A stretch of DNA of 63,625 nt from Octopus sinensis (Eukaryota): NCBI RefSeq assembly GCF_006345805.1, contig NW_021832129.1, positions 1-63,625 of the forward strand, in the 5' to 3' direction. The notes beneath the pieces were generated by a model. It did no database searches, had not been told where the DNA came from, and saw nothing but the letters and a program-made list of their open reading frames with translations. Shown here one piece after another: positions 7,841 to 30,838 of the stretch. A program made the translations under genes and the position numbers. The stretch's first letter is position 1, and every line of letters starts with the position of its first letter.

Positions 7841-8027
7841 TCACCACTTCGTTTGACGTCGGTTGTGTTTTTTTCGGCTCCTGAAAATTCGGTAAAAAAG
7901 AACAAAAAGCGTTGTTGTTGTTGTGGAAATTCTGAACGGCGTTGACGCGGTTTCGCGTTTCGCTCGTTCAGCGCGTTAAACTTTTTTCTGTTTTGGCGGC
8001 CGTTTTCGGTCTGTCAGACAGAAGGAA

Positions 8028-9433
8028 ATGGACTATGAGTCCCTCTAACAGACTTGTCCACGACAGATGAGGAACTGGAACAGGCAATTGCAGTGAAGCT
8101 GATGGAGGAAAAGGCTGGAGTTTTCGAGTCTTTATCAGACTTGTCTGAGAAGGAGCTAGAAAGGCAGCAGGAAATTGGAAAAGAAGCTGAGTTATACTTA
8201 TGCCGGTGTAACCAAGAAGGCGGAAGAGAAAGGGGTCGACTTGGCCAAGCTACCAAGTTAACCAGAAACACATGAAAAAGGAAAGCGGTGAGGTGGAACT
8301 ATCACCGACACCCAGGAGAAAAATGGTATGATAAGAGGACCATTGTTTACAGGGTGTTGCAAAACGAAGGAAGAGGGTAGAAGTTGTCCATGGAATGGAT
8401 AGAGGAAGCCCTGCGAAAACTGAGGAGGAAATAAATTTTCTGACTCGAGGATCCAAGTATGGGACCGTAGTTGTGCAGTTTTTAAAAAGTGAATCTGCAG
8501 CGAGGAAGATGGCGGCGAAGGCGGTGAAGTCGGAAAAGGTAACACTGTTACCTACGTATTTAAACAGGAGGATTACACGAATAAGGGTGGAGGGAGTGCC
8601 ACCAAACGTGGAGGCAGAATGGATTGTGGGGGCGCTGTGATCAGCGGCCACGAGGACGAAGTAGATATTCTCCATGCCTCGGTAAGTCCGAGGGCTGGAG
8701 AGGCGTAACAGTGGAGCTGAACGTACAGGCAGAGACCGAGGTACTGGTGGACCTGACGGAAAGCATCAGACTGGGAGAAGTGATCAGAGAGTGTGTGGTT
8801 GAGGGCAGGGCTCCACGTTGTGTACAAGTGTGGCCTTAGGGGTCACATAAGAGCCTTCTGCCCTCCCCCAGGGAAAGAAATGGATCCCGAACCAGAGAGA
8901 GAGAAGCAGAAACCAGAGGAGAAGGAAACAGAGGAAGAGAATACACAGAAATGGAAGGAAGCTGGAAGTAAGAGGAAGAGAAGAATACGTGGAAAATAAA
9001 ATAATATGGAACTACAATCCACCCCAAAACCACCCACGCCCTCTGAGTCCCACCCTATCCATGCAGACATTGAACCCACCCGCTCCCCCCCAACAAGAAA
9101 CACAAAGAAAAAAAGAATACACACACACAAGAGATTGAAATCGATATCAGGCCGTACATTTGTACTATGACTGAACAGAAAGAAGTAAAGTCTAATGGAA
9201 GAGTATAAATGGTATGATGTTGTGAGACTAGGTATGCTGTGATTGAAAAGAAGAACATAGGTGACTTTATGGTGATGTGTGAATGCGAGAATTGGGAGGT
9301 GAAAGATATAAGAATGAGCGATGAATTCGTGGAAAATATGGATGAGTATTTCGGAGTAAGAATGGATATGGAATTTGTTCGTATTGGCAAGGAACATTCA
9401 AGTGACTATGAAAAACAAAGGACAGGTAAGTGA
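8028..9433 (+). CDS. Element A unit 1 ORF1 (frameshifted as assembled)
   Basis: ATG 8028 (MDYES...) to ...RTGK-TGA 9433. Fragments match the consensus MDYESLTDLS...KRTIVYRV...TLLPTYLNRRITRIRVEGVPP...RAPRCYKCGLRGHIRAFC...MTEQKEV...RTGK. Confidence 0.75.
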
Positions 9434-9769
9434 TGCTGACGGACTGGGCCGTTGGTATCGCTTTCATTTAATCATTTTTTCGTTTAACAATTCATGTTCA
9501 TAAAGTTTAATTATAATGTTCTATGTCCCCATGTCTTTGGTGTCCCCTTCTGTGTCGCCCCTAGTGGGTAATAAGAAATCACCACTTCTTTTTTGACGTC
9601 GGTTGTGTTTTTTTTCGGCTCCTGAAAATTCGGTAAAAAAACAAAAAGCGTTGTTGTTGTTGTGGAAATTCTGAACGGCGTTTGACGCGCGGTTTCGCGT
9701 TTCGCTCGTTCAGCGCGTTAAACTTTTTTCTGTTTTGGCGGCCGTTTTCGGTCTGTCAGACAGAAGGAA

Positions 9770-11168
9770 ATGGACTATGAGTCTCTAACAGACTTGCCAC
9801 GACAGATGAGGAACTGGAACAGGCAATTGCAGTGAAGCTGATGGAGGAAAAGGCTGGAGTTTTCGAGTCTTTATCAGACTCGTCTGAGAAGGAGCTAGAA
9901 ATGGCAGCAAGGAATTTGGAAAAGAAGCTGAGTTATACTTATGGCCGGTGTAACAAGAAGGCGGAAGAGAAAGGGGTCGACTTGGCCAAGCTACCAAGTT
10001 ACCAGAAACACATGAAAAAGGAAAGCGGTGAGGTGGAACTATCACCGACACCCAGGAGAAAAGAATGGTATGATAAGAGGACCATTGTTTACAGGGTGTT
10101 CGCAAACGAAAGGAAGAGGGTAGAAGTTGTAACCATGGATGGATAGAGGAAGCCCTGCGAAGAACTGAGGAGGAAATAAATTTTCTGACTCGAGGATCCA
10201 AGTATGGGACCGTAGTTGTGCATTTTAAAAGTGAATCTGCAGCGAGGAAGATGGCGGCGAAGGCGGTGAAGTCGGAAAAGGTAACACTGTTACCTACGTA
10301 TTTAAACAGGAGGATTACACGAATAGGTGGAGGGAGTGCACCCAAACGTGAGGCAAATGGATGTGGGCGGCTGTGATCAGCGGCCACGAGGACGAAGTAG
10401 ATATTCTCCATGCCTCGGTTAAGTCCGAGGGCTGGAGAGGCGTAACAGTGGAGCTGAACGTACAGGCAGAGACCGAGGTACTGGTGGACCTGACGGAAAG
10501 CATCAGACTGGGAGAAGTGATCATGAGAGTGTGGGTGGAGGGCAGGGCTCCACGTTGTTACAAGTGTGGCCTGAGGGGTCACATAAGAGCCTTCTGCCCT
10601 CCCCCAGGGAAAGAAATGGATCCCGAACCAGAGAGAGAGAAGCAGAAACCAGAGGAGAAGGAAACAGAGGAAGAGAATACACAAAATGGAAGGAAGCTGG
10701 AAGTAAGAGGAAGAGAAGAATACGCGGAAAAGAAAATAATATGGAACTCCAATCCACCCCAAAACCACCCACCACCGCCCTCTGAGTCCCACCCTATCCA
10801 TGCAGACATTGAACCCACCCGCTCCCCCCCACAAGAAAACAAAGAAAAAAAAGAATACACACACACAGAGATTGAAATCGATATCAGGCCGTACTTTGTA
10901 CTATGACTGAACAGAAAGAAGTTAAAAGTCTAATGGAAGAGTATAAATGGTATGATGTTGGTGAGACTAGTATGCTGTGATTGAAAAGAAGAACATAGGT
11001 GACTTTATGGTGATGTGTGAATGCGAGAATTGGGAGGTGAAAGATATAAGAATGAGCGATGAATTCGTGGAAAATATGGATGAGTATTTCGGAGTAAGAA
11101 TGGATATGGAATTTGTTCGTATTGGCAAGGACTTCAAGTGACTATGAAAAACAAAGGACAGTAAGTGA
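9770..11168 (+). CDS. Element A unit 2 ORF1 (frameshifted as assembled)
   Basis: ORF-track fragments 9832-10146 and 10361-10906 carry the N-terminal part and the CX2CX4HX4C knuckle. Confidence 0.75.
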
Positions 11169-11501
11169 TTGCTGACGGACGGGCCGTTGGTATCGCTTTC
11201 ATTTAATCATTTTTTCGTTTAACAATTCATTTTCATAAAGTTTAATTATAATGTTCTATGTCCCCATGTTTTTTAGGTGTCCCCTTCTGTGTCCCCCTAT
11301 TGGGTAAGAAAGAAATCACCACTTCGTTTGACGTCGGTGTGTTTTTTTTCGGCTCCTGAAAATTCGGTAAAAAAGAACAAAAAGCGTTGTGTTGTTTGTG
11401 GAAATTCTGAACGGCGTTGACGCGGTTTCGCGTTTCGCTCGTTCAGCGCGTTAACTTTTTTCTGTTTTGGCGGCCGTTTTCGGTCTGTCAGACAGAAGGA
11501 A

Positions 11502-12909
11502 ATGGACTATGAGTCTCTAACAGACTTGTCCACGACAGATGAGGAACTGGAACAGGCAATTGCAGTGAAGCTGGATGGGAAAAGGCTGGAGATTTCGAGT
11601 CTTTATCAGACGTCTGCGTCTGAGAAGGAGCTAGAAATGGCAGCAAGGAAATTGGAAAAGAAGCTGAGTTATACTTATGCCGGTGTAACCAAGAAGCGGA
11701 AGAGAAAGGGGTCGACTTGGCCAAGCTACCAAGTTACCAGAAACACATGAAAAAGGAAGCGGTGAGGTGGAACTATCACCGACACCCAGGAGAAAAGAAT
11801 GGTATGATAAGAGGACCATTGTTTACAGGGTGTTTGCAAACGAAAGGAAGAGGGTAGAAGTTGTATCCATGGAATGGATAGAGGAAGCCCTGCGAAGAAC
11901 TGAGGAGGAAATAAATTTTCTGACTCGAGGATCCAAGTATGGACCGTAGTTGTGCACTTTAAAATGAATCTGCAGCGAGGAAGATGGCAGCGAAGGCGGT
12001 GAAGTCGGAAAAGTAACACTGTTACCTACGTATTTAAACCAGGAGGATTACACGAATAAGGTGGAGGGAGTGCCACCAAACGTGGAGGCAGAATGGATTG
12101 TGCGGCTGTGATCAGCGGCCACGAGGACGAAGTGGATATTCTCCATGCCTCGGTTAAGTCCGAGGGCTGGAGAGGCGTAACAGTGGAGCTGAACGTACAG
12201 GCAGAGACCGAGGTACTGGTGGACCTGACGGAAAGCATCAGACTGGGAGAAGTGATCATGAGAGTGTGGGTGGAGGGCAGGGCTCCACGTTGTTACAAGT
12301 GTGGCCTGAGGGGTCACATAAGAGCCTTCTGCCCTCCCCCAGGGAAAGAAATGGATCCCGAACCAGAGAGAGAGAAGCAGAAACCAGAGGAGAAGAGAAA
12401 CAGAGGAGAGAATACACAGAAATGGAAGGAAGCTGGAAGTAAGAGGAAGAGAAGAATACGTGGAAAAGAAAATAATATGGAACTCTCCAATCCACCCCAA
12501 AACCACCCACGCCCTCTGATCCCACCCTACCATGCAGACATTGAACCCACCCGCCTCCCCCCCAACAAGAAAACACAAAGAAAAAAAAGAATACACACAC
12601 ACAAGAGATTGAAAACGATATCAGGATGTACATTTGTACTATGACTGAACAGAAAGAAGTTAAAAGTCTAATGGAAGAGTATAAATGGTATGATGTTGGT
12701 GAGACTAGGTATGCTGTGATTGAAAAGAAGAACATAGGTGAGTTTATGGGGATGTGTGAAAGGAAGAATTGGGAGGTGAAAGATATAAGAATGAGCGATG
12801 AATTCGTGGAAAACATGGATGAGTATTTCGGAGTAAGAATGGATATGGAATTTATTCGTATTGGCAAAGAACATTCAGTGACTATGAAAAACAAAGGACA
12901 GGTAAGTGA
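11502..12909 (+). CDS. Element A unit 3 ORF1 (frameshifted as assembled)
   Basis: Fragments 11502-11750, 12093-12644 and 12626-12988. Knuckle CYKCGLRGHIRAFC at 12291-12332. Confidence 0.75.
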
Positions 12910-13254
12910 TGCTGACGGACGGGGCCGTTGGTATCGCTTTCATTTAATTCATTTTTTTCGTTTAACAATTCATGTTCATAAAGTTTAATTATAAGGTTAT
13001 ATGTCCCCATGTTTCTTAGTGTCCCTTTCTGTGTCGCCCCTAGTGGGTAATAAAGAATAAGAAAAACGTCACCACTTCGTTTGACGTCGGTTCGTGTTTT
13101 TACGCTCTGTAAAATCGGTAAAAAGACAAAAGCGTGGTTGTTGTTGTGAAATTTCTGAACGGCGTTGACGCGGTTTCGCGTTTCGCTCGTTCATCAGCGC
13201 GTTAACTTTTTTCTTGTTTTTTGCGGCCGTTTTCGGTCTGTCAGACAGAAGGAA

Positions 13255-14656
13255 ATGGAGTATGAGTCTCTAACAGACTTGTCCACGACAGATGAGGAAC
13301 TGGAACAGGCAATTGCAGTGAAGCTGATGGAGGAAAAGGCTGGAGTTTTCGAGTCTTTATCAGACTTGTCCTGAGAAGGAGCTAGAAATGGCAGCAAGGA
13401 AATTGGAAAAGAAGCTGAGTTATACTTATGCCGGTGTAACCAAGAAGGCGGAAGAGAAAGGGGTCGACTTGGCCAAGCTACCAAGTTACCAGAAACACAT
13501 GAAAAAGGAAAGCGGTGAGGTGGAACTATCACCGACACCCAGGAGAAAAGAATGGTATGATAAGAGGACCATTGTTTACAGGGTGTGCGCAAACGAAAGG
13601 AAGAGGGTAGAAGTTGTATCCATGGAATGGATAGAGGAAGCCCTGCGAAGAACTGAGGAGGAAATAAATTTTCTGACTCGAGGATCCAGTACGGGACCGT
13701 AGTTTTGCACTTTAAAAGTGAATCTGCAGCGAGGAAGATGGCAGCGAAGGCGGTGAAGTCGGAAAAGGTAACACTGTTACCGACGTATTTAAACAGGAGG
13801 ATTACACGAATAAGGGTGGAGGGAGTGCCACCAAACGTGGAGGCAGAATGGATTGTGGCGGCTGTGATCAGCGCCACGAGGACGAAGTGGATATTCTCCA
13901 TGCCTCGGTTAAGTCCGAGGGCTGGAGAGGCGTAACAGTGGAGCTGAACGTACGGCAGAGACCGAGGTACTGGTGGACCTGACGGAAAGCATCAGACTGG
14001 GAGAAGTGATCATGAGAGTGTGGGTGGAGGGCAGGGCTCCACGTTGTTACAAGTGTGGCCTGAGGGGTCACATAAGAGCCTTCTGCCCTCCCCCAGGGAA
14101 AGAAATGGATCCCGAACCAGAGAGAGAGAAGCAGAAACCAGAGGAGAAGGAAACAGAGGAAGAGAATACACAGAAATGGAAGAAGCTGGAAGTAAGAGGA
14201 AAGAAGAATACGTGGAAAAGAAAATAATATGGAACTGCAAATCCACCCCAAAACCACCCACGCCCTCTGAGTCCCACCCTATCCATGCAGACATTGAACC
14301 CACCCGCTCCCCCCCAACAAGAAAACAAAAGAAAAAAAAAATACACACACACAAGAGATTGAAATCGATATCAGGCCGTACATTTGTACTATGACTGAAC
14401 AGAAAGAAGTTAAAAGTCTAATGGAAGAGTATAAATGGTATGATGTTGGTGAGACTAGGTATGCTGTGATTGAAAAGAAGAACATAGGTGACTTTATGGT
14501 GATGTGTGAATGCGAGAATTGGGAGGTGAAAGATATAAGAATGAGCGATGAATTCGTGGAAAATATGATATATTCGGAGTAAGAATGGATATGGAATTTG
14601 TTCGTATTGGCAAGGAACATTCAAGTGACTATGAAAAACAAAGGACAGGTAAGTGA
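13255..14656 (+). CDS. Element A unit 4 ORF1 (frameshifted as assembled)
   Basis: Fragments 13388-13702, 13705-13935, 13973-14227 and 14391-14582 tile the consensus protein. Confidence 0.75.
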
Positions 14657-14994
14657 TGCTGACGGACGGGGCCGTTGGTATCGCTTTCATTTAATCATTT
14701 TTTCGTTTAACAATTCATGTTCATAAAGTTTAATTATAATGTTCTATGTCCCCATGTCTCTTAGGTGTCCCCTTCTGTGTCGCCCCTAGTGGGTAATAAA
14801 GAAATCAACCACTTTCGTTTGACGTCGGTCGTGTTTTTTTTACGCTCTGTAAAATTCGGTAAAAAAGAACAAAAAGCGTGGTTGTTGTTGTGGAAATTCT
14901 GAACGGCGTTGACGCGGTTTCGCGTTTCGCTCGTTCAGCGCGTTAAACTTTTTTCTGTTTTGGCGGCCGTTTTCGGTCTGTCAGACAGAAGGAA

Positions 14995-16398
14995 ATGGAC
15001 TATGAGTCTCTAACAGACTTGTCCACGACAGATGAGGAACTGGAACAGGCAATTGCAGTGAAGCTGATGGAGGAAAAGGCTGGAGTTTTCGAGTCTTTAT
15101 CAGACTTGTCTGAGAAGGAGCTAGAAATGGCAGCAAGGAAATTGGAAAAGAAGCTGAGTTATACTTATGCCGGTGTAACCAAGAAGCGAAGAGAAAGGGG
15201 TCGACTTGGCCAAGCTACCAAGTTACCAGAAACACATGAAAAAGGAAAGCGGTGAGGTGGAACTATCACCGACACCCAGGAGAAAAGAATGTATGATAAG
15301 AGGACCATTGTTTACAGGGTGTTGCGCAAACGAAAGGAAGAGGTAGAAGTTGTATCCATGGAATGGATAGAGGAAGCCCTGCGAAGAACTGAGGAGGAAA
15401 TAAATTTTCTGACTCGAGGATCCAAGTACGGGACCGAGTTGTGCACTTTAAAAGTGAATCTGCAGCGAGGAAGATGGCAGCGAAGGCGGTGAAGTCGGAA
15501 AAGGTAACACTGTTACCCGACGTATTAAAACAGGAGAATTACACGAATAAGGGTGAGGGAGTGCCACCAAACGTGGAGGCAGAATGGATTGTGGCGGCTG
15601 TGATCAGCGGCCACGAGGACGAAGTGGATATTCTCCATGCCTCGGTTAAGTCCGAGGGCTGGAGAGGCGTAACAGTGGAGCTGAACGTACAGGCAGAGAC
15701 CGAGTACTGGTGGACCTGACGAAAGCATCAGACTGGGAGAAGTGACATGAGAGTGTGGGTGGAGGGCAGGGCTCCACGTTGTTACAAGTGTGGCCTGAGG
15801 GGTCACATAAGAGCCTTCTGCCCTCCCCCAGGGAAAGAAATGGATCCCGAACCAGAGAGAGAGAAGCAGAAACCCAGAGAAAGGAAACAGAGGAAGAGAA
15901 TACACAGAAATGGAAGGAAGCTGGAAGTAAGAGGAGAGAAGAATACGTGGAAAAGAAAATAATATGGAACTCCAATCCACCCCAAAACCACCCACGTCCC
16001 TCTGAGTCCCACCCTATCCATGCAGACATTGAACCCACCCGCCCCCTCCCCCCCAACAAGAAAACAAAAGAAAAAAAAGAATACACACCCACACACAGAT
16101 TGAATCGATATATCAGGCCGTACATTTGTACTATGACTGAACAGAAAGAAGTTAAAAGTCTAATGGAAGAGTATAAATGGTATGATGTTGGTGAGACTAG
16201 GTATGCTGTGATTGAAAGAAGAACATAGGTGACTTTATGGTGATGTTTGAATGCGAGAATTGGGAGGTGAAAGATATAAGAATGAGCGATGAATTCGTGG
16301 AAAATATGGATGAGTATTTCGGAGTAAGAATGGATATGGAATTTGTTCGTATTGGCAAGAACATTCAAGTGACTATGAAAAACAAAGGACAGAAGTGA
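14995..16398 (+). CDS. Element A unit 5 ORF1 (frameshifted as assembled)
   Basis: Fragments 14995-15255, 15441-15719 and 15747-15962 tile the consensus protein. Confidence 0.75.
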
Positions 16399-16744
16399 TG
16401 CTGACGGACGGGGCCGTTGGTATCGCTTTCATTTAATCATTTTTTCGTTTAAAACAATTCATGTTCATAAAGTTTAATTATAATGTTATATGTCCCCATG
16501 TTTCTTAGTGTCCCTTTCTGTGTCGCCCCTAGTGGGTAATAAAGAAATAAGAAACGTCACCACTTCGTTTGACGTCGGTTGTGTTTTTTTTCGGCTCCTG
16601 AAAATTCGGTAAAAAGAACAAAAAGCGTGTTTGTTGTTGTGGAAATTCTGAACGGCGTTGACGCGGTTTCGCGTTTCGCTCGTTCAGCGCGTTAAACTTT
16701 TTTTTGTTTTTGGCGGCCGTTTTCGGTCTGTCAGACAGAAGGAA

Positions 16745-18146: not shown

Positions 18147-18493
18147 TGCTGACGGACGGGGCCGTTGGTATCGCTTTCATTTAATCATTTTTTCGTTTAA
18201 CAATTCATGTTCATAAAGTTTAATTATAATGTATATGTCCCCATGTTTCTTAGTGTCCCTTTCTGTGTCGCCCCTAGTGGGTAATAAAGAAATAAGAACG
18301 TCACCACTCGTTTGACGTCGTCGTTGTGTTTTTTTTCGGCTCCTGTAAAATTCGGTAAAAAAGAACAAAAAGCGGTGTTTTGTTGTTGTGGAAATTCTGA
18401 ACGGCGTTGACGCGGTTTCGCGTTTCGCTCGTTCAGCGCGTTAAACTTTTTTCTTTTGTTTGGCGGCCGTTTTCGGTCTGTCAGACAGAAGAA

Positions 18494-19899: not shown

Positions 19900-20237
19900 T
19901 GCTGACGGACGGGGCCGTTGGTATCGCTTTCATTTTATCATTTTTTCGTTTAAAACAATTCATTTTCATAAAGTTTAATTATAATGTTCTATGTCCCCAT
20001 GTCTGTTGGTGTCCCCTTCTGTGTCGCCCCTAGTGGGTAATAAAGAAATCACCACTTCGTTTGACGTCGGTTGTGTTTTTTTTTTGGCTCCTGAAAATTC
20101 GGTAAAAAAGAACAAAAAGCGGTTGTTGTTGTGTTGGAATTCTGAACGGCGTTGACGCGGTTTCGCGTTTCGCTCGTTCAGCGCGTTAAACTTTTTTCTG
20201 TTTTGGCGGCCGTTTTCGGTCTGTCAGACGGAAGGAA

Positions 20238-21645: not shown

Positions 21646-21989
21646 TGCTGACGGACGGGGCCGTTGGTATCGCTTTCATTTAATCATTTTTTCGTTTAAC
21701 AATTCATGTTCATAAAGTTTAATTATAATGTTATATGTCCCCATGTTTCTTAGTGTGTCCCTTTCTGTGTCGCCCCTAGTGGGTAATAAGAAATAAGAAA
21801 CGTCACCACTTCGTTTGACGTCGTTGTGTTTTTTTTCGGCTCCTGAAAATTCGGTAAAAAAGAACAAAAAGCGGTTTTGTTGTTGTGGAAATTCTGAACG
21901 GCGTTGACGCGGTTTCGCGTTTCGCTCGTTCAGCGCGTTAAACTTTTTTCTGTTTTGGCGGCCGTTTTCGGTCTGTCAGACAGAAGGAA

Positions 21990-23397
21990 ATGGACTATGA
22001 GTCTCTAACAGACTTGTCCCCGACAGATGAGGAACTGGAACGGCAATTGCAGTGAAGCTGATGGAGGAAAAGGCTGGAGTTTTCGAGTCTTTATCAGACT
22101 CGCCTACGTCTGAGAAGGAGCTAAGAAATGGCAGCGAGGAATTTGGAAAAGAAGCTGAGTTATACTTATGCCGGTGTAACCAAGAAGGCGGAAGAGAAAG
22201 GGGTCGACTTGGCCAAGCTACCAAGTTACCAGAAACACATGAAAAAGAAAGCGGTGAGGTGGAACTATCACCGACACCCAGGAGAAAAGAATGGTATGAT
22301 AAGAGGACCATTGTTTACAGGGTGTGCGCAAACGAAAGGAAGAGGGTAGAAGTTGTATCCATGGAATGGATAGAGGAAGCCCTGCGAAGAACTGAGGAGG
22401 AAATAAATTTTCTGACTCGAGATCCAAGTACGGGACCGTAGTTGTGCACTTTAAAAGTGAATCTGCAGCGAGGAAGATGGCAGCGAAGGCGGTGAAGTCG
22501 GAAAAGGTAACACTGTTACCTACGTATTTAAACAGGAGGATTACACGAATAAGGGTGGAGGGAGTGCCACCAAACGTGGAGCAGAATGGATTGTGGCGGC
22601 TGTGATCAGCGGCCACGAGGACGAAGTGGATATTCTCCATGCCTCGGTTAAGTCCGAGGGCTGGAGAGGCGTAACAGTGGAGCTGAACGTACAGGCAGAG
22701 ACCGAGGTACTGGTGGACCTGACGGAAAGCATCAGACTGGGAGAAGTGATCATGAGAGTGTGGGTGGAGGGCAGGGCTCCACGTTGTTACAAGTGTGGCC
22801 TGAGGGGTCACATAAGAGCCTTCTGCCCTCCCCCAGGGAAAGAAATGGATCCCGAACCAGAGAGAGAGAAGCAGAAACCAGAGGAGAAGGAACAGAGGAA
22901 GAGAATACACAGAAATGGAAGGAGCTGGAAGTAAGAGGAAGAGAAGAATACGTGGAAAAGAAAATAATATGGAACTCCAATCCACCCCAAAACCACCCCG
23001 CCCTCTGAGTCCCACCCTACCCATGCAGACATTGAACCCACACCCGCTCCCCCCCAACAAGAAAACAAAAGAAAAAAAGAATACACCACACAAGAGATTG
23101 AATCGATATCAGGCCGTACTTTTGTACTATGACTGAACAGAAAGAAGTTAAAAGTCTAATGGAAGAGTATAAATGGTATGATGTTGGTGAGACTAGTATG
23201 CTGTGATTGAAAAGAAGAACATAGGTGACTTTTATGTGATGTGTGAATGCGAGAATTGGGAGGTGAAAGATATAAGAATGAGCGATGAATTCGTGGAAAA
23301 TATGGATGAGTATTTCGGAGTAAGAATGGATATGGAATTTGTTCGTATTGGCAAGGAACATTCAAGTGACTATGAAAAACAAAGGACAGGTAAGTGA
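21990..23397 (+). CDS. Element A unit 9 ORF1 (frameshifted as assembled)
   Basis: Fragments 22128-22349, 22593-22934 and 23203-23397. Confidence 0.75.
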
Positions 23398-23741
23398 TGC
23401 TGACGGACGGGGCCGTTGGTATCGCTTTCATTTAATCATTTTTTCGTTTAACAATTCATGTTCATAAAGTTTAATTATAATGTTATATGTCCCCATGTTT
23501 CTTAGTGTCCCTTTCTGTGTCGCCCCTAGTGGGTAATAAAGAAATAAGAAACGTCACCACTTCGTTTGACGTCGGTTGTGTTTTTTTCGGCTCCTGAAAA
23601 TTCGGTAAAAAAACAAAAAAAAGCGGTGTTGTTGTTGTGGAAATTCTGAACGGCGTTGACGCGGTTTCGCGTTTCGCTCGTTCAGCGCGTTAAACTTTTT
23701 TCTGTTTTGGCGGCCGTTTTCGGTCTGTCAGACGGAAGGAA

Positions 23742-25151
23742 ATGGACTATGAGTCTCTGACAGACTTGTCCACGACAGATGAGGAACTGGAACGGGCAAT
23801 TGCAGTGAAGCTGATGGAGGAAAAGGCTGGAGTTTTCGAGTCTTTATCAGACTCGCCTACGTCTGAGAAGGAGCTAGAAATGGCAGCGAGGAATTTGGAA
23901 AAGAAGCTGAGTTATACTTATGCCGGTGTAACCAAGAAGGCGGAAGAGAAAGGGGTCGACTTGGCCAAGCTACCAAGTTACCAGAAACACATGAAAAAGG
24001 AAAGCGGTGAGGTGGAACTATCACCGACACCCAGGAGAAAAGAATGGTATGATAAGAGGACCATTGTTTACAGGGTGTGCGCAAACGAAAGGAAGAGGGT
24101 AGAAGTTGTATCCATGGAATGGATAGAGGAAGCCCTGCGAAGAACTGAGGAGGAAATAAATTTTCTGACTCGAGGATCCAAGTACGGGACCGTAGTTGTG
24201 CATTTTAAAAGTGAATCTGCAGCGAGGAAGATGGCAGCGAAGGCGGTGAAGTCGGAAAAGGTAACACTGTTACCTACGTATTTAAACAGGAGGATTACAC
24301 GAATAAGGGTGGAGGGAGTGCCACCAAACGTGGAGGCAGAATGGATTGTGGCGGCTGTGATCAGCGGCCACGAGGACGAAGTGGATATTCTCCATGCCTC
24401 GGTTAAGTCCGAGGGCTGGAGAGGCGTAACAGTGGAGCTGAACGTACAGGCAGAGACCGAGGTACTGGTGGACCTGACGGAAGCATCAGACTGGAGAAGT
24501 GATCATGAGAGTGTGGGTGGAGGGCAGGGCTCCACGTTGTTACAAGTGTGGCCTGAGGGGTCACATAGAGCCTTCTGCCCTCCCCCAGGGAAAGAAATGG
24601 ATCCCGAACCAGAGAGAGAGAAGCAGAAACCAGAGGAGAAGGAACAGAGGAAGAGAATACACAGAAATGGAAGGAAGCTGGAAGTAAGAGAAGAGAAGAA
24701 TACGTGGAAAAGAAAATAATATGGAACTGCAATCCACCCCAAAACCACCACCACACGCCCTCTGAGTCCCACCCTATCCATGCAGACATTGAACCCACCC
24801 GCTCCCCCCCAACAAGAAAACAAAAGAAAAAAAAGAATACACACACACAAGAGATTGAATCGATATCAGGCCGTACATTTGTACTATGACTGAACAGAAG
24901 AAGTTAAAAGTCTAATGGAAGAGTATAAATGGTATGATGTTGGTGAGACTAGGTATGCTGTGATTGAAAAAAGAACATAGGTGACTTTATGGTGATGTGT
25001 GAATGCGAGAATTGGAGGTGAAAGATATAAGAATGAGCGATGAATTCGTGGAAAATATGGATGAGTATTTCGGAGTAAGAATGGATATGGAATTTGTTCG
25101 TATTGGCAAGGAACATTCAAGTGACTATGAAAAACAAAGGACAGTAAGTGA
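23742..25151 (+). CDS. Element A unit 10 ORF1 (longest open stretch, about 245 codons in the consensus frame from the ATG)
   Basis: ORF 23742-24719 follows the consensus from MDYESLTDLS to ...VLVDLTE before shifting frame. Confidence 0.8.
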
Positions 25152-25494
25152 TGCTGACGGACGGGGCCGTTGGTATCGCTTTCATTTAATCATTTTTTCG
25201 TTTAACAATTCATGTTCATAAAGTTTAATTATAATGTTATATGTCCCCATGTTTCTTAGTGTCCCTTTCTGTGTCGCCCCTAGTGGGTAATAAAGAAATA
25301 AGAAACGTCACCACTTCGTTTGACGTCGGTTGTGTTTTTTTCGGCTCCTGAAAATTCGGTAAAAAAGAAAACAAAAGCGTGGTTGTTGTTGTGGAAATTC
25401 TGAACGGCGTTGACGCGGTTTCGCGTTTCGCTCGTTCAGCGCGTTAACTTTTTTCTGTTTTGGCGGCCGTTTTCGGTCTGTCAGACAGAAGGAA

Positions 25495-26895
25495 ATGGAC
25501 TATGAGTCTCTAACAGACTTGTCCACGACAGATGAGGAACTGGAACAGGCAATTGCAGTGAAGCTGATGGAGGAAAAGGCTGGAGTTTTCGAGTCTTTAT
25601 CAGACTTGTCTGAGAAGAGCTAGAAATGGCAGCAAGGAAATTGGAAAAGAAGCTGAGTTATACTTATGCCGGTGTAACCAAGAAGGCGGAAGAGAAAGGG
25701 GTCGACTTGGCCAAGCTACCAAGTTACCAGAAACACATGAAAAAGGAAAGCGGTGAGGTGGAACTATCACCGACACCCAGGAGAAAAGAATGGTATGATA
25801 AGAGGACCATTGTTTACAGGGTGTTCGCAAACGAAAGGAAGAGGGTAGAAGTTGTAACCATGGAATGGATAGAGGAAGCCCTGCGAAGAACTGAGGAGGA
25901 AATAAATTTTCTGACTCGAGGATCCAAGTACGGGACCGTAGTTGTGCATTTTAAAAGTGAATCTGCAGCGAGGAAGATGGCGGCGAAGGCGGTGAAGTCG
26001 GAAAAGGTAACACTGTTACCTACGTATTTAAACAGGAGGATTACACGAATAAGGTGGAGGGAGTGCCACCAACGTGGAGGCAGAATGGATTGTGGCGGCT
26101 GTGATCAGCGGCCACGAGGACGAAGTAGATATTCTCCATGCCTCGTTAAGTCCGAGGCTGGAGAGGCGTAACAGTGGAGCTGAACGTACAGGCAGAGACC
26201 GAGGTACTGTGGACCTGACGGAAAGCATCAGACTGGAGAAGTGATCATGAGAGTGTGGGTGGAGGCAGGGCTCCACGTTGTTACAAGTGTGGCCTGAGGG
26301 GTCACATAAGAGCCTTCTGCCCTCCCCCAGGGAAAAATGGATCCCGAACCAGAGAGAGAGAAGCAGAAACCAGAGGAAGAAGAAACAGAGGAAGAGAATA
26401 CACAGAAATGGAAGGAAGCTGGAAGTAAGAGGAAGAGAAGAATACGTGGAAAAGAAAATAATATGGAACTCCAATCCACCCCAAAACCACCCACGCCCTC
26501 TGAGTCCCACCCTATCCATGCAGACATTGAACCCCCCCGCTCCCCCCCAACAAGAAAACAAAAGAAAAAAAGAATACACACACACAAGAGATTGAAATCG
26601 ATATCAGAGGCCGTACATTTGTACTATGACTGAACAGAAAGAAGTTAAAAGTCTAATGGAAGAGTATAAATGGTATGATGTTGGTGAGACTAGGTATGCT
26701 GTGATTGAAAAGAAGAACATAGGTGACTTTATGGTGATGTGTGAATGCGAGAATTGGGAGGTGAAAGATATAAGAATGAGCGATGAATTCGTGGAAAATA
26801 TGGATGAGTATTTCGGAGTAAGAATGGATATGGAATTTGTTCGTATTGGCAAGGAACATTCAAGTGACTATGAAAAACAAAGGACAGGTAAGTGA
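25495..26895 (+). CDS. Element A unit 11 ORF1 (frameshifted as assembled)
   Basis: Fragments 25626-26171, 26337-26633 and 26626-26895. Confidence 0.75.
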
Positions 26896-27237
26896 TGCTG
26901 ACGGACGGGGCCGTTGGTATCGCTTTCATTTAATCATTTTTTCGTTTAACAATTCATGTTCATAAAGTTTAATTATAATGTTATATGTCCCCATGTTTCT
27001 TAGTGTCCCTTTCTGTGTCGCCCCTAGTGGGTAATAAAGAAATAAGAAACGTCACCACTTCGTTTGACGTCGGTGTGTTTTTTTTCGGCTCCTGAAAATT
27101 CGGTAAAAAGAACAAAAAGCGTGGTTGTTGTTGTGGAAACTCTGAACGGCGTTGACGCGGTTTCGCGTTTCGCTCGTTCAGCGCGTTAAACTTTTTTCTG
27201 TTTTGGCGGCCGTTTTCGGTCTGTCAGACAGAAGGAA

Positions 27238-28639
27238 ATGGACTATGAGTCTCTAACAGACTTGTCCCACGCAGATGAGGAACTGGAACAGGCAATTGCA
27301 GTGAAGCTGATGGAGGAAAAGGCTGGAGTTTTCGAGTCTTTATCAGACTTGTCTGAGAAGGAGCTAGAAATGGCAGCAAGGAAATTGGAAAAGAAGCTGA
27401 GTTATACTTATGCCGGTGTAACCAAGAAGGCGGAAGAGAAGGGGTCGACTTGGCCAAGCTACCAAGTTACCAGAAACACATGAAAAAGGAAAGCGGTGAG
27501 GTGGAACTATCACCGACACCCAGGAGAAAAGAATGGTATGATAAGAGGCCATTGTTTACAGGGTGTTCGCAAACGAAAGGAAGAGGGTAGAAGTTTAACC
27601 ATGGAATGGATAGAGGAAGCCCTGCGAAGAACTGAGGAGGAAATAAATTTTCTGACTCGAGGATCCAAGTATGGGACCGTAGTTGCATTTTTTTAAAAGT
27701 GAATCTGCAGCGAGGAAGATGGCGGCGAAGGCGGTGAAGTCGGAAAAGGTAACACTGTTACCTACGTATTTAACAGGAGGATTACACGAATAAGGGTGGA
27801 GGGAGTGCCACCAAACGTGGAGGCAGAATGGATTGTGGCGGCTGTGATCAGCGGCCACGAGGACGAAGTAGATATTCTCCATGCCTCGGTTAAGTCCGAG
27901 GCTGGAGAGGCGTAACAGTGGAGCTGAACGTACAGGCAGAGACCGAGGTACTGGTGGACCTGACGGAAAGCATCAGACTGGGAGAAGTGATCATGAGAGT
28001 GTGGGTGGAGGCAGGGCTCCACGTTGTTACAAGTGTGGCCTGAGGGGTCACATAAGAGCCTTCTGCCCTCCCCCAGGGAAAGAAATGGATCCCGAACCAG
28101 AGAGAGAGAAGCAGAAACCAGAGGAGAAGGAAACAGAGGAAGAGAATACACAGAATGGAAGGAAGCTGGAAGTAAGAGGAAGAAGAATACGTGGAAAAGA
28201 AAATAATATGGAACTCCAATCCACCCCAAAACCACCCACGCCCTCTGAGTCCCACCCTATCCATGCAGACATTGAACCCCCCCTCTCCCCCCACAACAAG
28301 AAAACAAAAGAAAAAAAAGAATACACACACACAAGAGATTGAAATCGATATCAGGCCGTACATTTGTACTATGACTGAACAGAAAGAAGTTAAAAGTCTA
28401 ATGGAAGAGTATAAATGGTATGATGTTGGTGAGACTAGGTATGCTGTGATTGAAAAGAAGAACATAGGTGACTTTATGGTGATGTGTGAATGCGAGAATT
28501 GGGAGGTGAAAGATATAAGAATGAGCGATGAATTCGTGGAAAATATGGATGAGTATTTCGGAGTAAGAATGGATATGGAATTTGTTCGTATTGGCAAGGA
28601 ACATTCAAGTGACTATGAAAAACAAGGACAGGTAAGTGA
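27238..28639 (+). CDS. Element A unit 12 ORF1 (frameshifted as assembled)
   Basis: Fragments 27238-27483, 27881-28342 and 28191-28709. The last reads ...KKKKNTHTQEIEIDIRPYICTMTEQ in frame. Confidence 0.75.
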
Positions 28640-28984
28640 TGCTGACGGACGGGGCCGTTGGTATCGCTTTCATTTAATCATTTTTTCGTTTAACAATTCA
28701 TGTTCATAAAGTTTAATTATAATGTTATATGTCCCCATGTTTCTTAGTGTCCCTTTCTGTGTCGCCCCTAGTGGTAATAAAGAAATAAGAAACGTCACCA
28801 CTTCTTCGTTTGACGTCGTTGTGTTTTTTTTCGGCTCCTGAAAATTCGGTAAAAAAGAACAAAAAGCGTGGTTGTTGTTGTGGAAATTCTGAACGGCGTT
28901 GACGCGGTTTCGCGTTTCGCTCGTTCAGCGCGTTAAACTTTTTTCTGTTTTGGCGGCCGTTTTCGGTCTGTCAGACAGAAGGAA

Positions 28985-30387
28985 ATGGACTATGAGTCTC
29001 TAACAGACTTGTCCACGACAGATGAGGAACTGGAACAGGCAATTGCAGTGAAGCTGATGGAGGAAAAGGCTGGAGTTTTCGAGTCTTTATCAGACTTGTC
29101 TGAGAAGGAGCTAGAAATGGCAGCAAGGAAATTGGAAAAGAAGCTGAGTTATACTTATGCCGGTGTAACCAAGAAGGCGGAAGAGAAAGGGGTCGACTTG
29201 GCCAAGCTACCAAGTTACCAGAAACACATGAAAAAGGAAAGCGGTGAGGTGGAACTATCACCGACACCCAGGAGAAAAGAATGGTATGATAAGAGGACCA
29301 TTGTTTACAGGGTGTTCGCAAACGAAAGGAAGAGGGTAGAAGTTGTAACCATGGAATGGATAGAGGAAGCCCTGCGAAGAACTGAGGAGGAAATAAATTT
29401 TCTGACTCGAGGATCCAGTATGGGACCGTAGTTGTGCATTTTAAAAGTGAATCTGCAGCGAGGAAGATGGCGGCGAAGGCGGTGAAGTCGGAAAAGGTAC
29501 ACTGTTACCTACGTATTTAACAGGAGGATTACACGAATAAGGGTGGAGGGAGTGCCACCAAACGTGGAGGCAGAATGGATTGTGGCGGCTGTGATCAGCG
29601 GCCACGAGGACGAAGTAGATATTCTCCATGCCTCGGTTAAGTCCGAGGGCTGGAGAGGCGTAACAGTGGAGCTGAACGTACAGGCAGAGACCGAGGTACT
29701 GGTGGACCTGACGGAAAGCATCAGACTGGGAGAAGTGATCATGAGAGTGTGGGTGGAGGGCAGGGCTCCACGTTGTTACAAGTGTGGCCTGAGGGGTCAC
29801 ATAAGAGCCTTCTGCCCTCCCCCAGGGAAAGAATGGATCCCGAACCAGAGAGAGAGAAGCAGAAACAGAGGAGAAGGAAACAGAGGAAGAAATACACAGA
29901 AATGGAAGGAAGCTGGAAGTAAGGAAGAGAAGAATACGTGGAAAAGAAAATAATATGGAACTCCAATCCACCCCAAAACCACCCACGCCCTCTGAGTCCC
30001 ACCCTATCCATGCAGACATTGAACCCACCCCCCCGCTCCCCCCCAACAAAAACAAAAGAAAAAAAAGAATACACACACACAAGAGATTGAAATCGATATC
30101 AGGCCGTACATTTGTACTATGACTGAACAGAAAGAAGTTAAAAGTCTAATGGAAGAGTATAAATGGTATGATGTTGGTGAGACTAGGTATGCTGTGATTG
30201 AAAAGAAGAACATAGGTGACTTTATGGTGATGTGTGAATTCGAGAATTGGGGGTGAAAGATATAAGAATGAGCGATGAATTCGTGGAAAATATGGATGAG
30301 TATTTCGGAGTAAGAATGGATATGGAATTTGTTCGTATTGGCAAGGAACATTCAAGTGACTATGAAAAACAAAGGACAGGTAAGTGA
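28985..30387 (+). CDS. Element A unit 13 ORF1 (frameshifted as assembled)
   Basis: Fragments 28985-29431 and 29543-29953. Stop at 30385-30387. Confidence 0.75.
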
Positions 30388-30838
30388 TGCTGACGGACGG
30401 GGCCGTTGGTATCGCTTTCATTTAATCATTTTTTCGTTTAACAATTCATGTTCATAAAGTTTAATTATAATGTTATATGTCCCCATGTTTCTTAGTGTCC
30501 CTTTCTGTGTCGCCCCTAGTGGGTAATAAAGAAATAAGAAACGTTAGCACGCCGTCAGGGTCGGACGTTGTTTTTTGTTCGGAAGGATGGAAAAAAAAGT
30601 GAAAAATTGTAAAAAAGACGTAACGGGATCAAATCGCGCGAGGCGTGCCGTTGCTTTTATAGAATGAACGCTCGTCGTTTTTACTTTTATAGAAGTTGTC
30701 AATTGTATGGTCCTATGTTTATAACCGTATTTTATTACTAGCTGTTGTTTTTTGGAAAAAAAAAGTTATTTTGATTGTTATTCGAAGTATATTACTTGTT
30801 GTCATTTATTAAGTCGCTAATGAGGGGGTAGGCCAATA

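What the first reader, a model, noticed from the sequence alone, without database searches (positions are those of the whole stretch)
7841..30536. 13-copy head-to-tail array of an ORF1-only ('half-LINE') element
Seen: 13 full-length ~1.75 kb units, all starting at tcaccact. Each encodes only a gag/ORF1-like protein (CX2CX4HX4C knuckle CYKCGLRGHIRAFC) followed by a ~140 nt 3' UTR, with no trace of ORF2. Established analogies: mammalian HAL1 (ORF1-only L1 derivatives) and Drosophila HeT-A (Gag-only, head-to-tail arrays, RT supplied in trans). Inference: a non-autonomous Tx1 derivative that keeps its own RNA-binding protein, borrows RT/endonuclease and builds interstitial arrays at a SINE site. 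The combination of ORF1-only, site-specific and array-forming is unusual.
Basis: partly seen in the sequence, partly recalled or inferred. Interest (0 to 1): 0.9.

Follow-up and report, generated by a model that had tools for sequence, protein, structure and literature searches.

The report
Octopus ORF1-only LINE tandem array
Thirteen head-to-tail copies of a 1.75 kb octopus retrotransposon that keeps only its RNA-binding ORF1 gene sit inside one SINE copy; the same family forms arrays at other octopus loci, a fresh example of known phenomena rather than a new mechanism.

Summary
The array is real: 13 head-to-tail units of 1737-1754 bp at 7841-30535. With a neighbouring deleted LINE ("B", 30555-32697), it interrupts position 21 of a single 228-bp SINE that still has its own 17-bp target-site duplication.

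The majority consensus encodes an intact 469-aa protein: coiled N-terminus, two RRM-like folds, one CCHC knuckle, then a 148-nt LINE tail. There is no ORF2. As assembled, every unit carries 9-18 frameshifts, which look largely like deletion-biased assembly noise.

Intact 468-472-aa copies occur in the Octopus vulgaris assembly. ORF1 evolves under purifying selection (pN/pS 0.41, p=6e-7). The protein family sits directly upstream of APE-RT-zinc-finger ORF2s in full-length octopus LINEs of L1/Tx1 type. The unit, B, the SINE and those LINEs share a ~55-nt tail.

"ORF1-only non-autonomous LINE" is therefore supported. "Tx1" is plausible but has no phylogeny behind it. "Site-specific for a SINE site" is not supported: five other loci have unrelated targets, and 8 of 9 sampled SINE heads are empty.

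Arrays recur at other loci. They seem to grow by repeated insertion at a regenerated junction plus unequal exchange.

Verdict: a new variant of known kinds (HAL1, HeT-A, tandem Tx1-mobilised SINEs), of moderate interest.

The parts
7802..7818 (+). Left target-site duplication of the host SINE (ATATTTGTGAAAAAGTA)
   Evidence: The identical 17-mer lies at 32913-32929, immediately after the SINE tail.
7820..7840 (+). First 21 nt of the host SINE (GGCGGCGAGCTGGCAGAAACG); the last 7 nt (AGAAACG) are the upstream copy of the target duplicated by the unit insertions
   Evidence: Joining 7820-7840 to 32706-32912 gives a full 228-bp SINE that aligns end to end with the copy at 57003-57233.
7841..30535 (+). 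Array of 13 head-to-tail ORF1-only LINE units. Units: 7841-9578, 9579-11315, 11316-13068, 13069-14805, 14806-16556, 16557-18300, 18301-20048, 20049-21802, 21803-23553, 23554-25307, 25308-27051, 27052-28794, 28795-30535
   Evidence: Pairwise substitution divergence is 1.1-4.3%. Private substitutions per unit are 22, 31, 34, 23, 23, 17, 21, 9, 6, 0, 2, 12, 3.
23554..23741 (+). 5'UTR of unit 10, used as the example unit (consensus positions 1-187, starting TCACCACTTCGTTTGACGTCGG)
   Evidence: The same 5' region recurs, with variants, in O. vulgaris and O. sinensis copies.
23742..24473 (+). Unit 10, ORF1 codons 1-244 in frame: helical N-terminus plus two RRM-like domains
   Evidence: AlphaFold2 model pLDDT 87. 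Foldseek hits to tandem-RRM proteins. HMMER gave 229 cephalopod relatives.
26279..26320 (+). CCHC zinc knuckle CYKCGLRGHIRAFC (example in unit 11; readable in units 2, 3, 4, 5, 6, 9, 11, 12, 13)
   Evidence: Weak Pfam zf-CCHC match.
26596..26895 (+). C-terminal ~90-codon segment of ORF1 (example in unit 11), ending ...EKQRTGK with the stop inside CAG|GTAAGTGA
   Evidence: Conserved in O. vulgaris gene models P0001-P0006. The fold prediction was inconclusive (pLDDT 52). pN/pS is about 1 with low pS.
25152..25299 (+). 3'UTR and LINE tail of unit 10 (approximate start), ending ...GCCCCTAGTGGGTAATAAAGAAAT
   Evidence: The last ~55 nt align with the tails of element B, the SINE, the L004 ORF1-only element and the L002 full-length LINE.
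25300..25307 (+). Inter-unit AAGAAACG, a copy of the SINE target. Example of the 8 internal junctions that carry it; the junctions after units 1, 2, 4 and 7 lack it
30536..30554 (+). AAGAAACGTTAGCACGCCG: SINE-derived 19-mer between the array and element B (upstream duplication of B's target)
   Evidence: The identical 19-mer lies at 32698-32716.
30555..32697 (+). Element B, an internally deleted LINE of a different family. It has a frameshifted ORF1 with RRM and CCHC, the first ~30 codons of ORF2 (MAVHVGCINVHGL...), the last ~45 codons of ORF2 (...LVNFFKFHLKK...), and the same tail
   Evidence: ORF2 ends match the full-length LINE in L002 (MANLRIGCLNVRGL......LINFFKFHLKRK...). B shares only the last 44 nt with the unit.
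32698..32912 (+). Remainder of the host SINE (from AAGAAACGTTAGC... to ...GTGGGTAGTAAAGAAAT)
32913..32929 (+). Right target-site duplication of the host SINE

Best explanation
The repeat unit is a non-autonomous 'half-LINE' of octopuses. It descends from an L1-superfamily (Tx1-like) LINE and keeps a 5'UTR, a type-I ORF1 (two RRM-like domains plus one CCHC knuckle) and the family's ~55-nt 3' tail, but has lost ORF2 completely.

The family is probably transcribed from its own 5' end and makes its own RNA-binding ORF1p. It is probably copied by the endonuclease/reverse transcriptase of autonomous relatives that recognise the shared tail. That trans step is inferred, not shown.

The array in the window arose inside one SINE copy. 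Element B inserted first at ...GGC|AGAAACG..., duplicating 19 bp. Units then inserted at the same bottom-strand nick with a 7-8-bp duplication, so the nick site was regenerated next to the tail of each new copy and used again.

The result is a head-to-tail stack whose 5' units carry many more private substitutions than its 3' units. Unequal exchange between the 1.75-kb units adds or removes copies; this is clearly seen in an O. vulgaris array.

The family is not restricted to this SINE site. What recurs is re-use of a site that already holds a relative.
For: Anatomy. The consensus ORF is intact at 469 aa and is followed directly by the tail; there is no APE or RT.

LINE ORF1 identity.
- HMMER found 229 relatives; every one whose source was looked up is cephalopod.
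- P0009 (E=3e-21) is the ORF1 of a full-length element in L002. It is followed by ORF2 with APE, an RT containing YADD, and a C-terminal zinc finger. L004 14832-19023 has the same layout.
- The related ORF2 matches human L1 ORF2p at 3e-27 against R2 at 1e-12. Homologues carry PF03372 + PF00078 + PF13966, and one is named 'Transposon TX1'.
- The AF2 model (pLDDT 87) has two beta-alpha-beta-beta-alpha-beta domains that hit tandem-RRM structures. This matches type-I ORF1p, defined as RRM + CCHC and described as consistent with the Tx1 clade (PMC5203782).

Function retained.
- Intact ORF1 copies exist: L001 17505-18923, L003 1564-2982, L005 8864-10270.
- pN/pS = 0.41 (binomial p = 6e-7) between the window consensus and the 87%-identical solo copy, which has the same ORF1-only architecture.

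Shared tail. It is common to the unit, B, the SINE, a second ORF1-only family and full-length LINEs.

Insertion into one SINE. The flanks rejoin into a complete SINE with its own TSD.

Repeated insertion.
- A SINE-derived AAGAAACG lies between units.
- Two 3'UTR variants are interleaved along the array.
- Divergence is star-like (R2 = 0.93), with a positional gradient of private substitutions (Spearman -0.84, p = 3e-4).
- In L006, a 146-bp 5'-truncated copy and a full copy are each followed by the same 20-bp non-element sequence.
- A 5'-truncated unit lies inside array L003.
- Precedent: tandem Tx1-mobilised SINEU-3 copies sandwiching a TSD are attributed to sequential insertion (PMC4494074).

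Unequal exchange. L001 has a 3-unit higher-order repeat, with units V2 and V5 identical and V3 and V6 0.1% apart.
Against: - No autonomous element with this unit's own 5'UTR and ORF1 was found, so the parent and the RT donor are unknown.
- Clade assignment rests on architecture and one auto-assigned name, not on a phylogeny.
- All 13 window units are frameshifted as assembled, so this particular array may be dead.
- The four TSD-less junctions coincide exactly with one 3'UTR variant (units 1, 2, 4, 7). Duplication of one junction, or template jumping, explains that better than independent insertions do.
- The polarity seen in the window is not seen in L001 or L003, where edge units are the most diverged.
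- The C-terminal 89 codons show pN/pS of about 1.
- The two ORF1-only subfamilies are mosaics (5' part pS 0.7-0.8, 3' part 0.2-0.3). Part of the inferred constraint could therefore have acted in autonomous ancestors.
Confidence: 0.75

Rival explanations
1. Satellite-like amplification. One or two insertions produced a dimer, and the remaining copies came from unequal crossing-over or replication slippage, not from retrotransposition.
For: L001 is built from a duplicated 3-unit block with identical copies. In the window, the TSD-less junction is perfectly linked to one 3'UTR variant, as expected if one junction was duplicated. Adjacent units 8-10 and 11-13 form two small clades. Double insertions as seeds of TE-derived satellites are described in PMC5932611.
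Against: There is no higher-order periodicity or near-identical pair in the window (minimum 1.1%). Divergence is largely star-like. 5'-truncated copies next to full copies in L003 and L006 cannot arise by exchange between full units. Two junction types and two tail variants are interleaved.
Confidence: 0.3
2. Strictly site-specific homing. The family's partner endonuclease recognises this SINE sequence, as Tx1 recognises Tx1D or R1/R2 recognise rDNA, and arrays form only at that site.
For: Both B and the units used the same bottom-strand nick in the SINE head. Many Tx1-clade elements are target-specific, including for other transposons (PMC4494074). A relative in L002 lies in an (ATT)n microsatellite.
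Against: Other copies and arrays lie in unrelated sequence (L001/L003, L005, L006). Of 9 SINE heads in about 195 kb sampled, only the host SINE is occupied, and most read AGAATCG rather than AGAAACG.
Confidence: 0.1
3. Assembly artefact. A short tandem (1-3 units) was inflated to 13 by a long-read assembler.
For: The window carries a deletion-biased indel load typical of unpolished long-read consensus. Tandem repeats are error-prone to assemble.
Against: Units differ by substitutions with a smooth positional gradient, by two junction types and by subfamily variants, which mis-assembly would not create. Independent arrays of 9-10 or more units exist in a different assembly (O. vulgaris GCA_951406725.2).
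Confidence: 0.07
4. A tandemly duplicated host gene family derived from a domesticated LINE ORF1, comparable to L1TD1 or ZCCHC3, and not a mobile element.
For: ORF1 is under purifying selection and intact in some copies. O. vulgaris annotation places gene models on the units.
Against: Units carry a LINE tail, target-site fragments and 5' truncations. They lie inside a SINE and are scattered over at least five chromosome-scale records. All 13 copies here are disrupted as assembled. The gene models are splice chimeras across units.
Confidence: 0.03

Closest known systems
HAL1 ('half-L1') of mammals (own knowledge: Bao & Jurka 2010; mentioned in papers listed)
   Same: An L1-superfamily derivative that keeps a coding ORF1 and the LINE ends, has lost ORF2, persists as a lineage of its own, and is presumed to use ORF2p supplied in trans.
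   Different: HAL1 has a type-II (Transposase_22) ORF1p and a poly(A) tail, and is dispersed. The octopus unit has a type-I ORF1p (RRM-RRM-CCHC), a specific non-poly(A) tail shared with a SINE, and forms long head-to-tail arrays.
HeT-A and other ORF1-only telomeric retrotransposons of Drosophila (PMC13534243)
   Same: Gag/ORF1-only, dependent on the ORF2 of related families, arranged head to tail. ORF2 loss is recurrent among array-forming relatives. Here at least two unrelated ORF1-only families (the unit and L004 'H2') plus the nearly ORF1-only element B occur in the same stacks.
   Different: The Drosophila elements are Jockey clade and sit at chromosome ends with an end-maintenance role. 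The octopus arrays are interstitial (7.8 kb and 31 kb of ordinary sequence on either side), of L1/Tx1 type, and have no evident host function.
Tx1-clade target-preferring LINEs and their SINEs (Tx1/Tx1D, Keno, Kibi/Koshi, Tx1-Mar with SINEU-3) (PMC4494074)
   Same: Type-I ORF1, APE-RT-zinc-finger ORF2, insertion into other transposons or microsatellites, a tail shared between LINE and SINE, and tandem copies sandwiching a TSD produced by sequential insertion.
   Different: The reported tandems are mostly dimers of SINEs at a defined target. Here a 1.75-kb protein-coding derivative reaches 13 copies, and the family does not show one defined target.
TE-derived tandem arrays seeded by double insertion and expanded by unequal exchange (PMC5932611)
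   Same: Head-to-tail TE dimers at re-used sites that grow into arrays. A higher-order repeat is seen in L001.
   Different: Those are described in Drosophila populations. Here the units keep a selected ORF and intact copies.

Membership tests
LINE type-I ORF1p (Khazina & Weichenrieder classification, as summarised in PMC5203782) | At least one RRM fold | tested here: met
   AF2 model of residues 1-244 has pLDDT 87, with two beta-alpha-beta-beta-alpha-beta domains at residues 84-240. Foldseek's specific hits are tandem-RRM proteins (IMP3 RRM12, UP1, U2AF65, La) at probability ~1, but with weak E-values (~1e-3) and low TM-scores. Pfam RRM models do not match.
LINE type-I ORF1p (Khazina & Weichenrieder classification, as summarised in PMC5203782) | CCHC (CX2CX4HX4C) zinc knuckle after the RRM | tested here: met
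   CYKCGLRGHIRAFC is in the consensus and in 9/13 units. The Pfam zf-CCHC match is below threshold (13.6 bits).
LINE type-I ORF1p (Khazina & Weichenrieder classification, as summarised in PMC5203782) | Homologues encoded immediately upstream of an APE-RT ORF2 | tested here: met
   P0009 in L002 and the ORF at L004 14832-16223 are each followed by ORF2.
Tx1 clade of non-LTR retrotransposons | RT domain clusters with reference Tx1 elements in a phylogeny (RTclass1-type test) | not testable with these tools
   No reference Tx1/L1 RT set was available. Indirect support only: human L1 ORF2p is the best PDB match (3e-27, against R2 at 1e-12), and one homologue is auto-named 'Transposon TX1 uncharacterized 149 kDa protein'. 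O. vulgaris is reported to have 13 recently active L1-Tx1 families (PMC13282606).
Tx1 clade of non-LTR retrotransposons | ORF2 with APE, RT and a C-terminal zinc finger | tested here: met
   Met for the autonomous relatives, not for the unit itself, which has no ORF2. Homologues carry PF03372 + PF00078 + PF13966. The L002 translation shows the same.
Tx1 clade of non-LTR retrotransposons | Preference for one defined target sequence | tested here: not met
   For the unit family, six loci have at least four unrelated flanks, and 1 of 9 SINE heads is occupied. The sample is small. The L002 relative does sit in (ATT)n.
Half-LINE (HAL1-like non-autonomous, ORF1-retaining LINE derivative) | ORF2 absent in all copies, with ORF1 and the LINE ends retained | tested here: met
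   All 13 window units and about 35 copies in L001, L003-L006 align colinearly to the 1.75-kb consensus, with the same ORF1-stop/3'UTR junction.
Half-LINE (HAL1-like non-autonomous, ORF1-retaining LINE derivative) | ORF1 maintained by selection, with intact copies present | tested here: met
   Intact 468-472 aa ORFs exist. pN/pS is 0.41, p = 6e-7. The exception is the last 89 codons, where pN/pS is about 1.
Half-LINE (HAL1-like non-autonomous, ORF1-retaining LINE derivative) | Hallmarks of retrotransposition (TSDs, 5' truncation, dispersed copies) | tested here: met
   7-8-bp and 20-bp duplications, 5'-truncated copies, and copies on at least five chromosome-scale records.
Half-LINE (HAL1-like non-autonomous, ORF1-retaining LINE derivative) | An identifiable autonomous partner sharing the 3' end | tested here: inconclusive
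   The ~55-nt tail is shared with B, the SINE and full-length LINEs of other ORF1 families. No full-length element with an intact ORF2 and exactly this tail was recovered.
HeT-A-type telomeric retrotransposon array | Located at a chromosome end | tested here: not met
   The array is flanked by 7.8 kb and 31 kb of ordinary interspersed sequence and lies inside a SINE.
TE-derived satellite | Higher-order periodicity or near-identical blocks from unequal exchange | tested here: not met
   Not seen in the window (minimum pairwise 1.1%, no block pattern). It is met in the O. vulgaris array L001.

The most novel reading that the evidence does not exclude
Octopus L1/Tx1-type LINEs may form an interstitial counterpart of the Drosophila telomere community. 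In this reading the endonuclease/RT (or read-through RNA carrying the flank) re-targets the 3' junction of any resident element bearing the family tail. Sites that hold one member then become growing head-to-tail stacks of mixed members (units, B, a second half-LINE, SINEs). In that niche ORF2 is repeatedly lost while ORF1 is kept. Parasitic ORF1-only lineages would then be a predictable outcome of array-forming LINE biology across phyla, not a Drosophila peculiarity.
Probability: 0.25. Interest if true: 0.7.

Novelty: new variant of a known kind. Interest (0 to 1): 0.5.

Why it matters
The family gives a second, independent case, in a mollusc and in the L1/Tx1 lineage, of ORF1-only retrotransposons that live in head-to-tail arrays. 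The well-studied case is the Jockey-clade telomeric elements of Drosophila, where ORF2 loss is said not to occur outside the telomeric niche (PMC13534243).

It also offers a tractable system for asking why a non-autonomous LINE keeps its own ORF1p. There are intact copies, a defined 55-nt tail shared with an abundant SINE, and a selected RRM-RRM-CCHC protein.

It is relevant to how TE-derived tandem arrays are seeded in a repeat-rich genome (O. vulgaris is reported as about 66% repeats).

On the practical side, these arrays generate spurious multi-exon gene models in the O. vulgaris annotation.

Tried and rejected
- Pfam on the consensus ORF1 gave only sub-threshold zf-CCHC and an irrelevant DUF4833.
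- A sequence search of the PDB returned only retroviral knuckles at E>0.2.
- The word-indexed protein search with the full ORF1 found only six O. vulgaris gene models, all through the C-terminal segment. The same search with the RRM-knuckle segment found nothing. The exhaustive HMMER search was needed.
- Rfam at gathering thresholds found nothing in the window, not even for the tRNA-like SINE head.
- Element B was considered as the parent of the unit and rejected: only the last 44 nt align.
- The repeated AGAAATCTACCCACGTG in L004 was first read as a 17-bp TSD. It may instead be the 5' terminus of the elements, since TCTACCCACGTG is homologous to TCACCACTTCG. That locus is therefore not used as evidence.
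- The AlphaFold2 model of the C-terminal 99 residues had pLDDT 52 from a shallow alignment, so no fold search was made.
- The idea that the positional age gradient is general was tested on L001 and L003 and is not upheld.
- The window does not overlap any fetched O. sinensis or O. vulgaris locus at 99% identity or above, so its source assembly remains unidentified.

Full report
**1. What is in the sequence.**

The window is eukaryotic and rich in microsatellites. TCACCACT occurs 13 times against 2.4 expected. Twelve of these mark unit starts, and unit 5 starts with the variant TCAACCACT.

Cutting at these points gives 13 direct units of 1737-1754 bp between 7841 and 30535. Each is 96.3-98.6% identical to the majority consensus.

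The consensus is 1753 bp:
- a 187-nt 5'UTR;
- an uninterrupted 469-codon ORF (MDYES...EKQRTGK) containing CYKCGLRGHIRAFC;
- a 148-nt 3'UTR ending GCCCCTAGTGGGTAATAAAGAAAT;
- in most units, an extra AAGAAACG.

There is no endonuclease or RT coding sequence in the unit or elsewhere in the window.

**2. State of the copies.**

No unit is intact as assembled. Each has 9-18 frame changes against the consensus ORF, the longest ATG-ORF is 325 aa, and the knuckle is readable in 9 of 13 units.

The indels look largely artefactual:
- There are 158 deletion and 62 insertion events, of which 127 are 1-nt deletions. The count never falls below about 13 events per unit.
- Unit 10 has 13 indel events but no private substitution.
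- Copies of the same family in the O. vulgaris chromosome assembly have few indels.
- Those copies include intact ORFs of 472, 472 and 468 aa (L001 17505-18923, L003 1564-2982, L005 8864-10270).

**3. Context: one SINE, split.**

Immediately left of the array lies GGCGGCGAGCTGGCAGAAACG (7820-7840). Right of the array comes AAGAAACGTTAGCACGCCG (30536-30554), then a different 2.1-kb element, B (30555-32697). The same 19-mer follows again, continuing as ...GGGCGAAATGCGTAG... to ...GTGGGTAGTAAAGAAAT (32698-32912).

Joining 7820-7840 to 32706-32912 gives a complete 228-bp SINE that aligns end to end with the copy at 57003-57233. This SINE is flanked by its own 17-bp duplication, ATATTTGTGAAAAAGTA (7802-7818 and 32913-32929). 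So 24.9 kb has been inserted after position 21 of a single SINE.

Element B carries:
- a frameshifted ORF1 with RRM-like and CCHC motifs;
- the first ~30 codons of an ORF2 (MAVHVGCINVHGL...);
- the last ~45 codons of that ORF2 (...LVNFFKFHLKK...);
- the same tail as the unit.

B is therefore an internally deleted LINE. It shares only its last 44 nt with the unit, so it is not the unit's parent.

**4. What the protein is.**

Pfam and PDB sequence searches give only sub-threshold CCHC hits. An exhaustive HMMER search found 229 relatives at about 30% identity. All that carry a name are from Octopus vulgaris, O. sinensis, O. bimaculoides or Argonauta.

One relative, P0009 (E=3e-21), lies in locus L002 directly upstream of an ORF2 with these features:
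- an APE endonuclease (MANLRIGCLNVRGL...);
- an RT with YADD;
- a C-terminal Cys/His motif.

L004 14832-19023 has the same arrangement.

The L002 ORF2 matches human L1 ORF2p at 3e-27, against R2 proteins at about 1e-12. Its database homologues carry Exo_endo_phos + RVT_1 + zf-RVT, and one coral protein is auto-named 'Transposon TX1 uncharacterized 149 kDa protein'.

An AlphaFold2 model of residues 1-244 was built from unit 10 with a 64-sequence alignment. It has pLDDT 87 and shows two helices followed by two beta-alpha-beta-beta-alpha-beta domains. Foldseek's specific hits are tandem-RRM proteins, with high probability but weak E-values and low TM-scores.

The RRM(s)-plus-CCHC layout is the type-I ORF1p, described as consistent with the Tx1 clade (PMC5203782). 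The protein is thus a LINE ORF1p by homology and by genomic association. The Tx1 label is plausible, but it was not tested by phylogeny.

**5. ORF1-only as a lineage.**

All other copies found align colinearly to the 1.75-kb consensus with the same ORF1-stop/3'UTR junction. None has ORF2. These copies are:
- 9 units plus a 75%-identical unit in L001;
- about 10 units in L003;
- several in L004;
- a solo 87%-identical copy in L005;
- a fragment plus a full copy in O. sinensis L006.

Between the window consensus and the L005 copy, pN/pS is 0.41 (55 synonymous against 85 non-synonymous differences, binomial p=6e-7). The signal is similar in the N-terminal, RRM-knuckle and linker parts. The last 89 codons show low pS and pN/pS of about 1, and their fold prediction was inconclusive. 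That segment may be constrained at the RNA level or not at all.

The 75% subfamily is a mosaic: its 5' part is far more diverged than its 3' part. This suggests recombination between family members.

A second, unrelated ORF1-only element (L004 10430-12330) has an intact 493-aa ORF1 that is 29% identical to B's ORF1, and it carries the same kind of tail. ORF2 loss is therefore recurrent in this group.

**6. Shared tail.**

The last ~55 nt of the unit, B, three SINE copies, the second half-LINE, the L002 full-length LINE and a fragment at window ~58.0 kb all align. RNAalifold finds a 4-bp hairpin just before AATAAA, with one compensatory pair. This is weak evidence on its own.

A tail shared between LINEs and non-autonomous elements is the usual basis of trans-mobilisation (PMC4494074). 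That the unit borrows the RT in this way is inferred, not shown.

**7. How the array formed.**

*Evidence for repeated insertion at one site:*
- Eight of the 12 internal junctions carry the SINE-derived AAGAAACG between tail and next head. This is as expected if the bottom-strand nick is at GGC|AGAAACG and the top-strand nick is 7-8 nt downstream (19 nt for B).
- Two 3'UTR variants are interleaved along the array (units 1, 2, 4, 7 against the rest).
- Divergence is mostly star-like (R2 0.93).
- Private substitutions fall from 22-34 in units 1-5 to 0-12 in units 9-13 (Spearman -0.84, p=3e-4). This fits addition of new units at the 3' junction next to B.
- In L006, a 146-bp 5'-truncated copy and a full copy are each followed by the same 20-bp non-element sequence.
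- L003 contains a 5'-truncated unit inside an array.
- Sequential insertion producing tandems that sandwich a TSD is documented for Tx1-mobilised SINEU-3 (PMC4494074).

*Evidence for unequal exchange:*
- L001 has a duplicated 3-unit block, with two unit pairs identical or 0.1% apart.
- In the window, the four junctions lacking the target fragment are exactly those that follow the minority 3'UTR variant. Duplication of one junction, or RT template jumping, explains this more simply.
- Units 8-10 and 11-13 form adjacent small clades.
- The polarity seen here is absent from L001 and L003.

I conclude that both processes act. Their shares are unresolved.

**8. Site specificity.**

Not supported for the unit family.
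- The flanks differ between loci: AGAAACGTTAGC... here, ATGGAGGAAAGC... in L001/L003, TAGTACAATATGGTTTGTGC in L006, and no evident duplication in L005.
- Of nine SINE heads in about 195 kb sampled, only the host SINE is interrupted.
- What does recur is stacking next to a resident relative: B here, a 5'-truncated LINE in L001/L003, and the second half-LINE in L004.
- The SINE itself forms 2-3-copy head-to-tail arrays in the window.

A simple reading is that the junction of family tail and duplicated target is a regenerated entry site. This is a hypothesis.

**9. Comparison and verdict.**

The element works like mammalian HAL1 (ORF1-only L1 derivative; own knowledge). In arrangement it resembles HeT-A-type ORF1-only array formers (PMC13534243). 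It differs in being type-I, of L1/Tx1 type, interstitial and molluscan.

Tandem sequential insertion and TE-seeded arrays are both known (PMC4494074; PMC5932611). I found no description of this family in the searchable literature. O. vulgaris L1-Tx1 families are merely counted there (PMC13282606).

It is a new variant of known kinds and of moderate interest. 'Each encodes' and 'site-specific' are overstated, and 'Tx1' and 'RT in trans' remain inferences.

Noticed in passing
window 6753-7123 and 57051-57527: The SINE that hosts the array forms its own head-to-tail arrays (2.0 and 2.6 copies, period 183-184). Both loci have the same junction, ...GTAGTAAAGAAATAG|GTATTTCGTCTG..., in which the downstream copies start at about SINE position 50. 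This could be a dimeric SINE subfamily or repeated 5'-truncated insertion at the tail.
   Followed up: partly
window ~57690-58076: A short element ends in the family tail (GGCCCCTGTGGCTAATAAAGAAAC). It is preceded by an open frame ending ...DLKAYMAK with GTAAGT at the stop. It is probably a 5'-truncated ORF1-plus-tail element of yet another family, abutting the SINE array.
   Followed up: partly
window 25140-25151 (each unit), 32157-32166 (B); L002 ~11803; L004 ~16216: A 5'-splice-site-like GTAAGT (GTAAGC in B) overlaps the ORF1 stop codon in five of the six families examined (all but L004 H2). In the two full-length LINEs it is followed by a 40-50-nt pyrimidine-rich stretch ending in AG just before the ORF2 ATG, which looks like a mini-intron. 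O. vulgaris gene models use this donor to splice from one unit into the next.
   Followed up: partly
window 7841-30535: There is a deletion-biased indel floor of about 13 events per 1.75 kb, even in a unit with no private substitution. This suggests an incompletely polished long-read assembly, so ORF calls anywhere in this window should be read with that in mind.
   Followed up: partly
L004 10430-12330 (O. vulgaris OX597839.1): A second ORF1-only element of an unrelated ORF1 family: intact 493-aa ORF1, a ~290-nt 3'UTR and a family-type tail. It is stacked between three copies of the window's unit and a 5'-truncated LINE.
   Followed up: partly
L001 5242-20835 (O. vulgaris OX597821.1): An array of 9 units with a 3-unit (~5.19 kb) higher-order repeat. 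Units 2 and 5 are identical, and units 3 and 6 are 0.1% apart. It is followed by a 75%-identical ORF1-only unit whose 5' half is far more diverged than its 3' half.
   Followed up: yes
L002 9780-15345 (O. sinensis CM016872.1): A full-length (frameshifted) LINE of the same superfamily, inserted in an (ATT)n microsatellite with the repeat on both sides. This is a candidate microsatellite-targeting relative.
   Followed up: partly
proteins P0003, P0004, P0005 (O. vulgaris annotation): These gene models fuse the unit's C-terminal ORF1 segment to unrelated proteins: a long multi-domain protein, an RTE-type endonuclease fragment and a HAUS1-like protein. They are either exonisation of unit fragments or annotation chimeras.
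   Followed up: no
window 35669-36037: A 15-bp minisatellite, CCGCCGTCATCACCA, in about 24 copies (86% matches).
   Followed up: no
window 4273-4572: A 158-bp tandem duplication (1.9 copies, 92% matches) of unknown origin.
   Followed up: no
window 6380-6760: An inverted SINE fragment on the minus strand (head at 6481-6504) abuts a plus-strand SINE that begins at ...AAACGTTAGCACGCC (6725). The breakpoint is at the same AGAA|ACG position of the SINE head that the array uses.
   Followed up: no
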